A stretch of 60,177 nucleotides of DNA, the filler included, from Hausera hauseri (lineage: Eukaryota): the NCBI GenBank assembly GCA_046269625.1. It is 12 parts of 12 records of this genome, joined end to end, with 100 filler letters (N's around TTAATTAATTAA, not from the genome) between each part and the next. Parts side by side here need not be neighbours in the genome. Positions count along the whole stretch, not along the records: positions 30,710 to 35,384 come from JBJURY010480021.1; 11 more parts are not named here. One strand, written 5' to 3'. Of the stretch, positions 31,729-31,991 are shown in pieces. Within the stretch, counting starts at the first letter, position 1; each line of letters begins with the position of its first letter. The notes beneath the pieces were generated by a model. It was given only the letters and a program-made list of their open reading frames with translations. It was not told the DNA's origin and ran no database searches. Position numbers and translations under genes: made by a program.

Positions 31729-31991
31729 TACCTGTTTGATCCCGCCAGCAAACCCCATATGCTTGTCTGACACAGAGCCTTCCTTTGGTCTGACCGGAGT
31801 GAATGGCTACCGCATCCAAGGAAGGAAGGAAGGCAGCAGCATCCAAGGGGCTCTTTTGAGAGGCCCTGCGAATCGATCGGTAATTCCAGCTTTAAATAGC
31901 GTATTTCTAAACACTTTAATAATAATAATAATAATAATAATACTCTAAGTAAACGCTCGAAAAGCTCTAATAGCTCTTCGTTAAAAAGCTC
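31729..31991 (+). pseudogene. Compressed 18S rRNA-derived motifs (5' end of 18S)
   Basis: TACCTGTTTGATCCCGCCAG..CATATGCTTGTCT (18S start), GGCTACCGCATCCAAGGAAGG..CAGCAG, CTCTTTT..GAGGCCCTG, CGGTAATTCCAGCT..AATAGCGTAT, GTTAAAAAGCTC, all in 18S order. Confidence 0.8.

What the first reader, a model, noticed from the sequence alone, without database searches (positions are those of the whole stretch)
31729..31991. Tyrosine-recombinase element carrying a miniaturised 18S rRNA skeleton
Seen: five short blocks spanning roughly the first 680 nt of 18S rRNA, starting at its exact 5' end, are packed in order into ~260 nt about 400 bp past the stop of an intact YR gene on the opposite strand. A second set from the central/3' part of 18S lies at 30782-30986. 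Inference: the element arose by insertion into rDNA and kept 18S pieces as part of itself. They could serve as targeting or att-like sites, an rRNA-mimic RNA, or a Pol I/nucleolar signal. Caveat: I recognise conserved 18S blocks more easily than variable ones.
Basis: partly seen in the sequence, partly recalled or inferred. Interest (0 to 1): 0.8.

Follow-up and report, generated by a model that had tools for sequence, protein, structure and literature searches.

The report
Shrunken 18S relic beside recombinase transposon
A 260-base stretch really is a heavily deleted remnant of the first third of an 18S ribosomal RNA gene, lying 395 bases from an intact fish tyrosine-recombinase transposon gene, but it looks like decaying ribosomal DNA and not a working part of the element.

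Summary
The main observation holds. At 31729-31991 (+) there are collinear 18S-derived blocks: 18S nt 1-37, 388-437, 495-512, 583-612 and 625-636. They start exactly at 18S nt 1. They are the only significant 18S matches in the piece: three nhmmer hits (E 5e-4 to 8.5e-3), and an exact 8-mer chain of 80 nt against a maximum of 52 in 1000 shuffles.

The second set (30782-30986) is not confirmed.

The neighbouring minus-strand gene is an intact three-exon tyrosine recombinase. Its exon borders match a Poecilia formosa protein. The family is multi-copy and spread over many chromosomes in teleosts, so it is Crypton-like.

The mini-18S shows no sign of function:
- Rfam's SSU model does not match it.
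- Its predicted fold is no more stable than shuffles (z -1.17).
- Most rRNA helices keep only one strand.
- About 8 of 103 universally invariant 18S positions are mutated.
- It carries slippage scars: (AAGG)n, (TAA)n, and 27-nt and 9-nt duplications.

Contigs of another run hold the whole piece at uniform high depth, so the relic and the gene are co-amplified.

Best reading: a decayed rDNA fragment inside or beside a repeat unit that holds the recombinase gene. Moderate to low interest.

The parts
31729..31768 (+). 18S block A: 18S nt 1-37 (helix 1 hairpin and the 5' strand of helix 3), with a 3-nt insertion at 31751-31753
   Evidence: nhmmer E 5.4e-4, model 1-39; blastn E 0.028; primer-type pattern at 2 mismatches with 0/100 shuffles
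31769..31792 (+). Degenerate stretch. It may be 18S 38-49 (..AGCC) followed by about 113-124 (TTCCTTTGGTC). Uncertain.
   Evidence: Gapped global alignment places it differently for each reference; the nearest reference strings, TTCCTT(A/G)GATC at nt 115, have 2 mismatches
31793..31839 (+). 18S block B: nt 388-396 plus 408-437 (CCGGAG..AATGGCTACCGCATCCAAGGAAGG..CAGCAG). It has an 11-nt internal deletion and two extra AAGG units.
   Evidence: nhmmer E 1.1e-3; blastn 25/27 matching 84 rDNA loci; TRF (AAGG)4 at 31818-31833; pattern at 1 mismatch with 0/100 shuffles
31832..31848 (+). Local duplicate of 31805-31821 (GGC..GCATCCAAGG) at a 27-nt offset: a slippage or duplication scar
   Evidence: the repeat finder family D17
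31848..31879 (+). 18S block C: nt 495-512 (GGGCTCTTTTGAGAGGCCCTG, with a 2-nt insertion), then a weak match to 513-527. This helix varies between lineages; only 2 of the 59 references (L009/L114, one contig, rDNA of unidentified origin) carry the same string.
   Evidence: Global alignment; regex survey of the references
31877..31911 (+). 18S block D: nt 583-612 (CGGTAATTCCAGC..AATAGCGTAT), the 3' strands of helices 18 and 3, with a 1-nt insertion
   Evidence: nhmmer E 8.5e-3, model 579-608; blastn E 0.028
31917..31977 (+). (TAA)8.7 microsatellite (31917-31942) and three copies of a 9-mer, TAAAAGCTC (31950-31977), derived from the following 18S block
   Evidence: TRF
31980..31991 (+). 18S block E: nt 625-636 (GTTAAAAAGCTC), 12/12. 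This is the last recognisable 18S sequence.
   Evidence: Exact 12-mer in the chain; blastn 13/13
33078..34844 (-). YR gene exon 1 (589 aa): N-terminal Cys/His zinc-finger-like region, low-complexity linker, core-binding domain and the first catalytic Arg (GHRAG). The intron that follows starts with GTGAGT.
   Evidence: ORF; BLASTP to P0001: 53% over aa 1-161 and 44% over 290-589, ending at P0001 residue 693
32702..32950 (-). YR gene exon 2 (83 aa): the HKT lysine and the TDIRTA arginine. Flanked by a CAG acceptor and a GTGGGT donor.
   Evidence: 70% identity to P0001 694-776, end to end
32386..32595 (-). YR gene exon 3 (69 aa plus stop): MCHDT..DRFY holds the catalytic His and Tyr. AATAAA overlaps the stop codon.
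   Evidence: 76% identity to P0001 777-827; invariant H795 and near-invariant Y804 in alignment A1
32195..32313 (.). Array of related 13-mers downstream of the gene, followed by GGGGAACCAG and (TG)n
   Evidence: the repeat finder D1; self-blastn to 35071-35213; local alignment
35058..35228 (.). Array of related 13-mers upstream of the gene (39-nt unit x2.5, 13-nt unit x4.4)
   Evidence: TRF; the repeat finder D1 and I1
30782..30986 (+).
   Evidence: No nhmmer hit; chains within or near the shuffle range and inconsistent between references. In three other runs a roughly 88%-identical version has 80 unalignable letters in place of 30893-30971 (tables 5 and 8).
31485..31494 (.). Run of 10 N. The link between the left part (30710-31484) and the rest therefore rests on scaffolding.
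   Evidence: Sequence

Best explanation
The stretch 31729-31991 is a non-functional, internally deleted relic of the 5' third (nt 1 to about 636) of an animal-type 18S rRNA gene, presumably the host's own. It is a fragment of ribosomal DNA that lost about 60% of its length through five or six deletions of 11 to about 260 nt. It also picked up substitutions, microsatellite expansions and small tandem duplications, in a genome region prone to replication slippage. It lies 395 bp beyond the 3' end of an intact, intron-containing tyrosine-recombinase gene of a Crypton-like family that is multi-copy and dispersed in teleosts, and the two face each other. Relic and gene now belong to the same repeated unit of at least 4.3 kb, which is co-amplified and nearly uniform in sequence in at least one run. 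Shown: 18S origin, collinearity, the exact 5' start, loss of rRNA structure, mutated invariant sites, the intact YR gene, and co-amplification. Inferred: that decay was neutral, that the source was genomic rDNA and not a reverse-transcribed rRNA, and that the relic has no role in the element.
For: 18S origin and order. No rRNA-like constraint: no Rfam SSU match at E<=10; fold z -1.17, with 23 of 200 shuffles folding at least as well. Against the Rfam structure line, the retained blocks hold the 3' strand of helix 18 without its 5' strand, the 3' strand of the 398-419 hairpin without its 5' strand, and the partner of helix 5 without helix 5; only helix 1 and helix 3 keep both strands. The mini-18S differs at 8 of 103 columns that are at least 97% conserved in 59 eukaryotes; two of these columns were fixed by my own search pattern. 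Slippage scars inside the relic: (AAGG)4, (TAA)8.7, a 9-mer x3 and a 27-nt-offset duplicate, and the piece has 29 TRF rows in 4.7 kb. Block C carries a lineage-variable helix sequence found in only 2 of the 59 references, so not only universal blocks survive. The relic is a low-GC island (0.41-0.52) in spacer-like DNA of 0.64-0.67 GC. YR gene. Co-amplification: run X2 covers the whole piece at depth about 750-1400 with almost no differences, while a copy of 33281-33674 that is about 88% identical has depth 33.
Against: Five or six large deletions in 640 nt, alongside only about 6-8% substitution at invariant sites, is more deletion than a typical neutral pseudogene shows. The retained columns are somewhat more conserved than average (0.959 against 0.906, permutation p 0.036), although using distant references biases detection that way. 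The relic starts exactly at 18S nt 1, and I could not show that the upstream 230 bp is 5' ETS. Uniform depth over relic and gene in X2 would also fit a relic that is part of the mobile element. No other copy or homologous locus could be inspected.
Confidence: 0.6

Rival explanations
1. The mini-18S is an integral, transposing part of the YR element. An ancestor sat in an 18S gene near nt 636-640 and took the flanking rDNA along, for example by imprecise excision of the circular intermediate. The relic has travelled and decayed with the element ever since, without a necessary function.
For: Uniform depth across relic and gene in X2, and near-identical pieces of both the left flank and the gene at equal low depth in X7 and X11. 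The 18S homology ends abruptly at nt 636, 395 bp from the gene. The relic is clearly older than the recent amplification (about 8% at invariant sites against about 0% between copies). Crypton borders are hard to define and the elements lack long terminal repeats (PMC3212892).
Against: No 18S sequence on the other side of the gene. Related 13-mer arrays and (TG)n tracts bracket the gene at 32195-32335 and 35058-35358 and leave the relic outside that 3-kb unit. Segments of much higher depth within the piece show it is a mosaic of several repeats. Relatives are dispersed over many chromosomes. No second copy was examined.
Confidence: 0.25
2. The 18S blocks are kept by selection for a function of the element: a homology or landing site for integration into rDNA, an rRNA-mimicking RNA (for example a decoy for snoRNAs or processing factors), or a nucleolar or Pol I signal.
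For: The blocks are mostly highly conserved 18S segments. On the minus strand they resemble the antisense elements of box C/D snoRNAs (SNORD14 20.7 bits, E 0.09; Afu_300), so they could pair with such guides. Target-specific Cryptons and rDNA-specific YR integration exist elsewhere (PMC8869645; PMC10871703).
Against: No stable fold. Helices are disrupted. Invariant positions are mutated, including a helix 1 pair. There are microsatellite and duplication scars inside the blocks. All snoRNA hits are far below gathering scores. YR core sites are short and need no 260-nt patchwork. No transcript evidence: no RNA run holds the stretch. The family is not rDNA-restricted in relatives.
Confidence: 0.05
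3. The patchwork was made in one step at the RNA level. A reverse transcriptase copied mature 18S rRNA with several template jumps, and the cDNA was inserted here. That would explain the exact nt-1 start and the many large deletions.
For: The homology starts exactly at 18S nt 1. Several large deletions accompany only modest substitution.
Against: The deletion end points do not coincide with helix bases in the Rfam structure. The 3' part of 18S and a poly(A) or target-site duplication are absent, and LINE-made copies are usually 5'-truncated and not 3'-truncated (general knowledge). No RT gene lies in the piece. The slippage scars fit DNA-level events.
Confidence: 0.08
4. The resemblance to 18S is chance plus the reader's eye for conserved motifs.
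For: Rfam's SSU model gives no hit. The second set does look like chance.
Against: Three independent collinear hits with E 5e-4 to 8.5e-3 in 9.4 kb searched. The chain score is 6.6 sd above shuffles and was reached by none of 1000.
Confidence: 0.01

Closest known systems
rDNA pseudogene fragments or orphons (rRNA-gene pieces outside functional arrays, masked as SSU-rRNA repeats)
   Same: Derived from 18S, non-functional, mutated at invariant sites, embedded in GC-rich spacer-like and repeat-rich DNA, and co-amplified with neighbouring repeats.
   Different: Unusually compact: five or six internal deletions shrink 636 nt to about 260 nt while order and the exact 5' end are kept. It lies directly next to an intact recombinase gene.
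Crypton DNA transposons (tyrosine-recombinase transposons; Goodwin 2003; Kojima & Jurka 2011, PMC3212892)
   Same: A YR gene with introns and no reverse transcriptase nearby. The family is multi-copy and dispersed in fish. No long terminal repeats. Some Crypton lineages are target-specific (CryptonV in microsatellites, PMC8869645).
   Different: No DUF3504 or CryptonA signature by Pfam. It has an N-terminal zinc-finger-like region. The termini are not defined. No Crypton has been reported with an rRNA-derived module.
rDNA-specific mobile elements (R2/R1, Pokey in 28S; YR-encoding whispoviruses inserting in 28S, PMC10871703)
   Same: A mobile-element gene adjoining rRNA-gene sequence. YR-mediated insertion into rDNA has precedent in crustacean endogenous viruses.
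   Different: Here the rRNA sequence is on one side only, is old and deleted, and lies in the opposite orientation. Relatives of the gene are spread over many chromosomes. No intact target rRNA gene or target-site duplication is seen.
rRNA-derived SINEs and satellites (SINE3 from 5S rRNA, 5S-derived fish satellites)
   Same: rRNA-derived sequence that has become part of a repeated unit.
   Different: No Pol III promoter logic applies to 18S, there is no SINE tail, and there is no evidence that the relic moves on its own.

Membership tests
Eukaryotic SSU rRNA gene (Rfam RF01960) | Scores above the family's gathering threshold (50 bits) with the covariance model | tested here: not met
   No SSU hit at E<=1 on the piece or at E<=10 on 31690-32030. 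A real 18S fragment scores 613.7 bits.
Eukaryotic SSU rRNA gene (Rfam RF01960) | Both strands of the 5'-domain helices are kept | tested here: not met
   Only helices 1 and 3 keep both strands. Helices 4, 5, 18 and the 398-419 hairpin keep one strand. Fold z is -1.17.
18S-derived sequence (pseudogene or relic) | Significant collinear sequence similarity to 18S | tested here: met
   nhmmer gives three hits, E 5.4e-4 to 8.5e-3, in order. The 8-mer chain is 80 nt against a maximum of 52 in 1000 shuffles.
Tyrosine recombinase superfamily | Catalytic residues Arg, Lys, Arg, His and the Tyr nucleophile, in order | tested here: met
   GHRAG, HKT, TDIRTA, MCHDT and DRFY are read in exons 1-3. They align with R664, K698 and H795 (invariant) and R770 and Y804 (90% or more) in a 14-member alignment. 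The first His of the usual HxxR motif is Asp.
Tyrosine recombinase superfamily | Recognised by a family profile or by fold | tested here: inconclusive
   Pfam Phage_integrase gives nothing for the window's exons, E 0.069 for P0001, and matches 3 of 14 relatives, best E 6.7e-5. The Atlas model of P0001 aligns to XerC or phage integrases at TM 0.61-0.66 by query. One relative is named 'Tyr recombinase domain-containing' by UniProt. No structure was predicted for the window's own protein, because its exons were not joined.
Crypton DNA transposons | YR is the only element-encoded enzyme (no RT or RNase H as in DIRS/Ngaro) | tested here: inconclusive
   There is no other credible ORF or Pfam domain in the 4.7-kb piece, but the piece may not hold the whole element.
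Crypton DNA transposons | Multiple dispersed copies | tested here: met
   Relatives more than 90% identical lie on many chromosome-scale contigs in Xiphophorus maculatus and Danio aesculapii, and there are many loci in D. rerio. A second copy of part of exon 1 (33281-33674), about 88% identical, is present in run X2.
Crypton DNA transposons | Defined termini with short (4-6 bp) direct repeats | not testable with these tools
CryptonA | DUF3504-type YR domain | tested here: not met
   No DUF3504 hit in the window's exons, P0001 or 13 relatives.
rDNA-specific transposon | rRNA-gene sequence on both sides of the insertion, at one fixed site | tested here: not met
   18S blocks lie on one side only, and nothing rRNA-like is found at 32000-32385 or 34845-35384. 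Only 170 nt or so lie beyond the right-hand array, so this test is weak.
rDNA-specific transposon | Family members confined to rDNA loci | tested here: not met
   Relatives lie on many different chromosomes. Their flanks were not inspected.

The most novel reading that the evidence does not exclude
A teleost Crypton-like tyrosine-recombinase element whose mobile unit includes an rDNA-derived module. The module would be a stripped-down 18S 5' domain kept because it guides the element to rDNA or the nucleolus, either as homology for recombination or as a decoy RNA. That would be a kind of rRNA-gene targeting by a eukaryotic DNA transposon not yet described.
Probability: 0.06. Interest if true: 0.75.

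Novelty: new member of a known kind. Interest (0 to 1): 0.3.

Why it matters
If the relic is just decayed rDNA, the finding is a tidy example of how far slippage-driven deletion can shrink an rRNA pseudogene while leaving its order readable. It also shows that standard rRNA models (Rfam cmscan) miss such relics entirely. The intact three-exon recombinase adds a member to a poorly described, apparently active Crypton-like family that teleost annotations list only as 'uncharacterized protein'. If the relic proves to travel with the element, it would be evidence of a past or present rDNA association of a vertebrate YR transposon. That bears on how such elements choose safe landing sites.

Tried and rejected
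- **Rfam cmscan.** Run on the piece and on sub-ranges: no SSU hit. There were only sub-threshold snoRNA hits (SNORD14, Afu_300, snoU105B), which reflect complementarity to 18S and not snoRNA genes. No C/D boxes were seen by eye.
- **An inverted 18S piece at 31948-31975.** Rejected. It is a tandem 9-mer derived from AAAAGCTC.
- **Second set as a central or 3' part of 18S.** Rejected. A possible relation to 18S 325-420 (CGATGGTA..CATGGTGGTAA..CATCCAAG) appeared with one reference only (L119) and is not robust.
- **5.8S or 28S blocks.** None.
- **tRNA or SINE heads.** None.
- **Clean LTR-like direct repeats around the gene.** Only loosely related 13-mer arrays were found.
- **Relatives' loci.** Scans of metagenome contigs and viral contigs with a 14-protein alignment found no relative. 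An exact junction string of the mini-18S is absent from both collections.
- **Translated ORFs over the relic.** They have no relatives in either protein library, which is uninformative.
- **The search of earlier findings.** Closed.
- **Vertebrate 18S reference.** Deliberately not fetched, so as not to pull human rDNA. Vertebrate 18S recalled from memory served only as a lead.
- **Joined exons.** The three exons were never joined. Each was searched by reference on its own.

Full report
**What was examined.** Only the piece 30710-35384 was used. It contains a run of 10 N at 31485-31494, so the left 775 bases are joined to the rest by scaffolding only.

**Is the 18S skeleton real?**

Rfam's covariance models give no SSU rRNA match, either on the whole piece at E<=1 or on 31690-32030 at E<=10. 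The only related signals there are far-sub-threshold box C/D snoRNA hits on the minus strand (SNORD14 20.7 bits against a gathering score of 64; Afu_300). These arise because snoRNA guide elements are complementary to 18S.

For a direct test I needed real 18S sequences. I took 59 complete eukaryotic 18S genes from eukaryotic rDNA contigs that contaminate bacterial assemblies. I used the non-vertebrate form of the 5' motif on purpose, so that no human rDNA would be fetched.

- **blastn.** With short words, only three HSPs in the 4675 bases rise above background. In addition 31980-31991 matches nt 625-636 exactly.
- **nhmmer.** A profile HMM built from the 59 sequences and run with all filters off finds the same three places (E 5.4e-4, 1.1e-3, 8.5e-3; model 1-39, 404-430, 579-608) and nothing else below E 1.
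- **8-mer chain.** A collinear chain of exact 8-mers sums to 80 nt, against mean 23.7, sd 8.5 and max 52 in 1000 dinucleotide shuffles. No 267-nt window that lies wholly outside the region scores above 43 on either strand.
- **Primer-type strings.** Two universal 18S strings match with 2 and 1 mismatches, where 0 of 100 shuffles match.

The first set is therefore real and starts exactly at 18S nt 1.

A gapped alignment and inspection give the following anatomy:

| Part | 18S nt | Window | Notes |
|---|---|---|---|
| Block A | 1-37 | 31729-31768 | Perhaps a degenerate continuation to nt 49 |
| Possible short block | about 113-124 | within 31769-31792 | Uncertain |
| Block B | 388-396 + 408-437 | 31793-31839 | 11 nt missing, two extra AAGG units |
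| Block C | 495-512 | 31848-31868 | Weak extension to 31879 |
| Block D | 583-612 | 31877-31911 | 1-nt insertion |
| Repeats | none | 31917-31977 | (TAA)n and a triplicated 9-mer |
| Block E | 625-636 | 31980-31991 | 12/12 |

About 60% of the first 636 nt is missing.

The second set (30782-30986) fails the same tests:
- There is no nhmmer hit.
- The best blastn HSP is at background level.
- The 8-mer chains differ from reference to reference and mostly fall within the shuffle range.
- In three other runs, a version about 88% identical has 80 unalignable letters in place of 30893-30971.

No 5.8S or 28S blocks exist in the piece.

**Does the relic look functional?** No.
- **Fold.** As RNA it folds no better than shuffles (z -1.17).
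- **Helices.** I mapped the blocks onto the Rfam SSU structure line, obtained by aligning a real 18S. Only helix 1 and helix 3 keep both strands. Helix 18 keeps its 3' strand only, the 398-419 hairpin keeps its 3' strand only, and the partners of helices 4 and 5 are split between kept and deleted parts. A miniature rRNA fold is thus excluded, and the deletion end points do not sit at helix bases.
- **Invariant sites.** The relic differs at 8 of 103 columns that are at least 97% conserved across the 59 eukaryotes; two of those columns were fixed by my own search pattern. One change (G7 to T) breaks a helix 1 pair.
- **Slippage scars.** The relic contains (AAGG)4, (TAA)8.7, a 27-nt-offset duplicate and a 9-mer x3. 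The whole piece is extremely rich in microsatellites, with 29 TRF rows in 4.7 kb.
- **Conservation of kept columns.** The kept columns are only slightly more conserved than average (0.959 against 0.906; p 0.036). This is expected from detection with distant references.
- **Block C.** It comes from a lineage-variable helix and matches only 2 of the 59 references, which are two copies on one contig of unidentified origin. So not only universal motifs survive. From memory, vertebrate 18S carries the same string, which fits the host's own 18S as the source; no vertebrate or fish reference was used to test this.
- **Composition.** The relic is a low-GC island (0.41-0.52) in DNA of 0.64-0.67 GC.

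**The neighbouring gene.**

The minus strand carries a three-exon gene: exon 1 at 34844-33078, exon 2 at 32950-32702 and exon 3 at 32595-32386. Both introns have canonical GT..AG borders, and AATAAA overlaps the stop codon. Each exon, searched on its own, aligns end to end with consecutive parts of Poecilia formosa LOC107833086 (P0001). Exon 1 stops at residue 693, exon 2 covers 694-776 at 70% identity and exon 3 covers 777-827 at 76%. The exons were not joined at any step.

The catalytic Arg, Lys, Arg, His and Tyr are present and are invariant or nearly so in 14 relatives. Pfam's Phage_integrase matches weakly. The Atlas model of P0001 resembles XerC and phage integrases at TM 0.61-0.66.

The family is found in Poecilia, Xiphophorus, Danio, Liparis, Synaphobranchus, Misgurnus and Nothobranchius. 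Copies more than 90% identical lie on many chromosomes in X. maculatus and D. aesculapii. That is transposon behaviour and does not fit a family restricted to rDNA.

There is no reverse transcriptase in the piece and no DUF3504 signature. I therefore call the gene Crypton-like and do not assign it to a named Crypton group. Its termini could not be defined.

**Are relic and gene one unit?**

Twelve coded runs hold near-identical sequence. I laid contigs of four of them on the piece.
- **Run X2.** It covers the whole piece at a roughly uniform depth: about 1000 at 30863-31149, about 880-910 at 31490-31801, 461 at 31802-31957 and 750-1380 over the gene. There are essentially no differences. A copy of 33281-33674 that is about 88% identical has depth 33.
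- **Runs X7, X11 and X12.** They hold pieces of the left part and of the gene with 0-1 differences at depth 3-8.

So relic and gene are co-amplified in at least one organism, and the amplification is much younger than the relic.

Three segments are 5-12 times deeper in X2: 30710-30865, 31178-31489 and 32114-32269. They are shared with other repeats, so the piece is a mosaic.

Arrays of related 13-mers, each followed by GGrGAACCAG and a (TG)n tract, bracket the gene at 32195-32335 and 35058-35358. If they mark the element's borders, the relic is outside it. CryptonV families are reported to insert into microsatellites (PMC8869645).

**Verdict.**

The best-supported reading, at about 0.6, is a decayed, slippage-shortened rDNA fragment lying beside, or within the same amplified repeat unit as, an intact Crypton-like recombinase gene. 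The main rival, at about 0.25, is that the relic is carried as a passive part of the mobile element after an ancestral insertion near 18S nt 636-640. A selected function, a one-step origin by reverse transcription, and chance are all less likely.

The literature searched describes no YR element with an 18S module. YR-mediated insertion into 28S rDNA is known for crustacean endogenous viruses (PMC10871703).

**Limits.** The following could not be done or gave nothing:
- No fish genome collection was available.
- The metagenome and viral scans found nothing.
- Translated ORFs over the relic have no relatives.

Noticed in passing
window 34358-34540 (core 34410-34488): A long imperfect palindrome (187 nt, 75%) lies inside the coding low-complexity linker of YR exon 1. 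Its core hairpin (35-nt arms, 89% complementary) gives sub-threshold miRNA-precursor hits on both strands (mir-3622, 43.7 bits against a gathering score of 78).
   Followed up: partly
window 32195-32335 and 35058-35358: Arrays of related 13-mers (GCTGTATTTCCAG, CCTGTAAGTACGG, GGGCTGGGTTTTG) flank the YR gene on both sides. Each is followed by GGrGAACCAG and a (TG)n tract about 3025 bp apart. They could be recombinase binding sites, element borders at a microsatellite target, or borders of a tandem unit.
   Followed up: partly
window 30710-30865, 31178-31489, 32114-32269: In run X2 these segments are 5-12 times deeper than the rest of the piece. The last one is also much deeper in three other runs, with loose ends at 32134-32170. 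They are shared with other, more abundant repeat families.
   Followed up: no
window 30715-31433: Runs X7, X11 and X12 hold a second version of this stretch, about 88% identical, at higher depth than the exact version. In that version 30893-30971 is replaced by 80 unrelated letters. The left part of the piece is therefore an older, separate repeat.
   Followed up: no
window 32386-32395 (minus strand): The polyadenylation signal AATAAA overlaps the last codons and the stop of the YR gene. The mRNA should therefore end some 370 nt or more before the mini-18S.
   Followed up: no
whole piece 30710-35384: Microsatellite density is very high: 29 TRF rows in 4.7 kb, including (GAG)13, (TAA)9, (GGGT)9, (TGGTCC)5, (GGTGC)6 and (GCA)7, several of them inside the coding exon.
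   Followed up: no
runs X1-X12: Twelve differently labelled organisms from twelve studies hold near-identical sequence. Three low-depth runs match with 0-1 differences over 150-800 bp, at a nearly constant depth ratio to X2. This fits very close relatives, but carry-over between libraries cannot be excluded.
   Followed up: no
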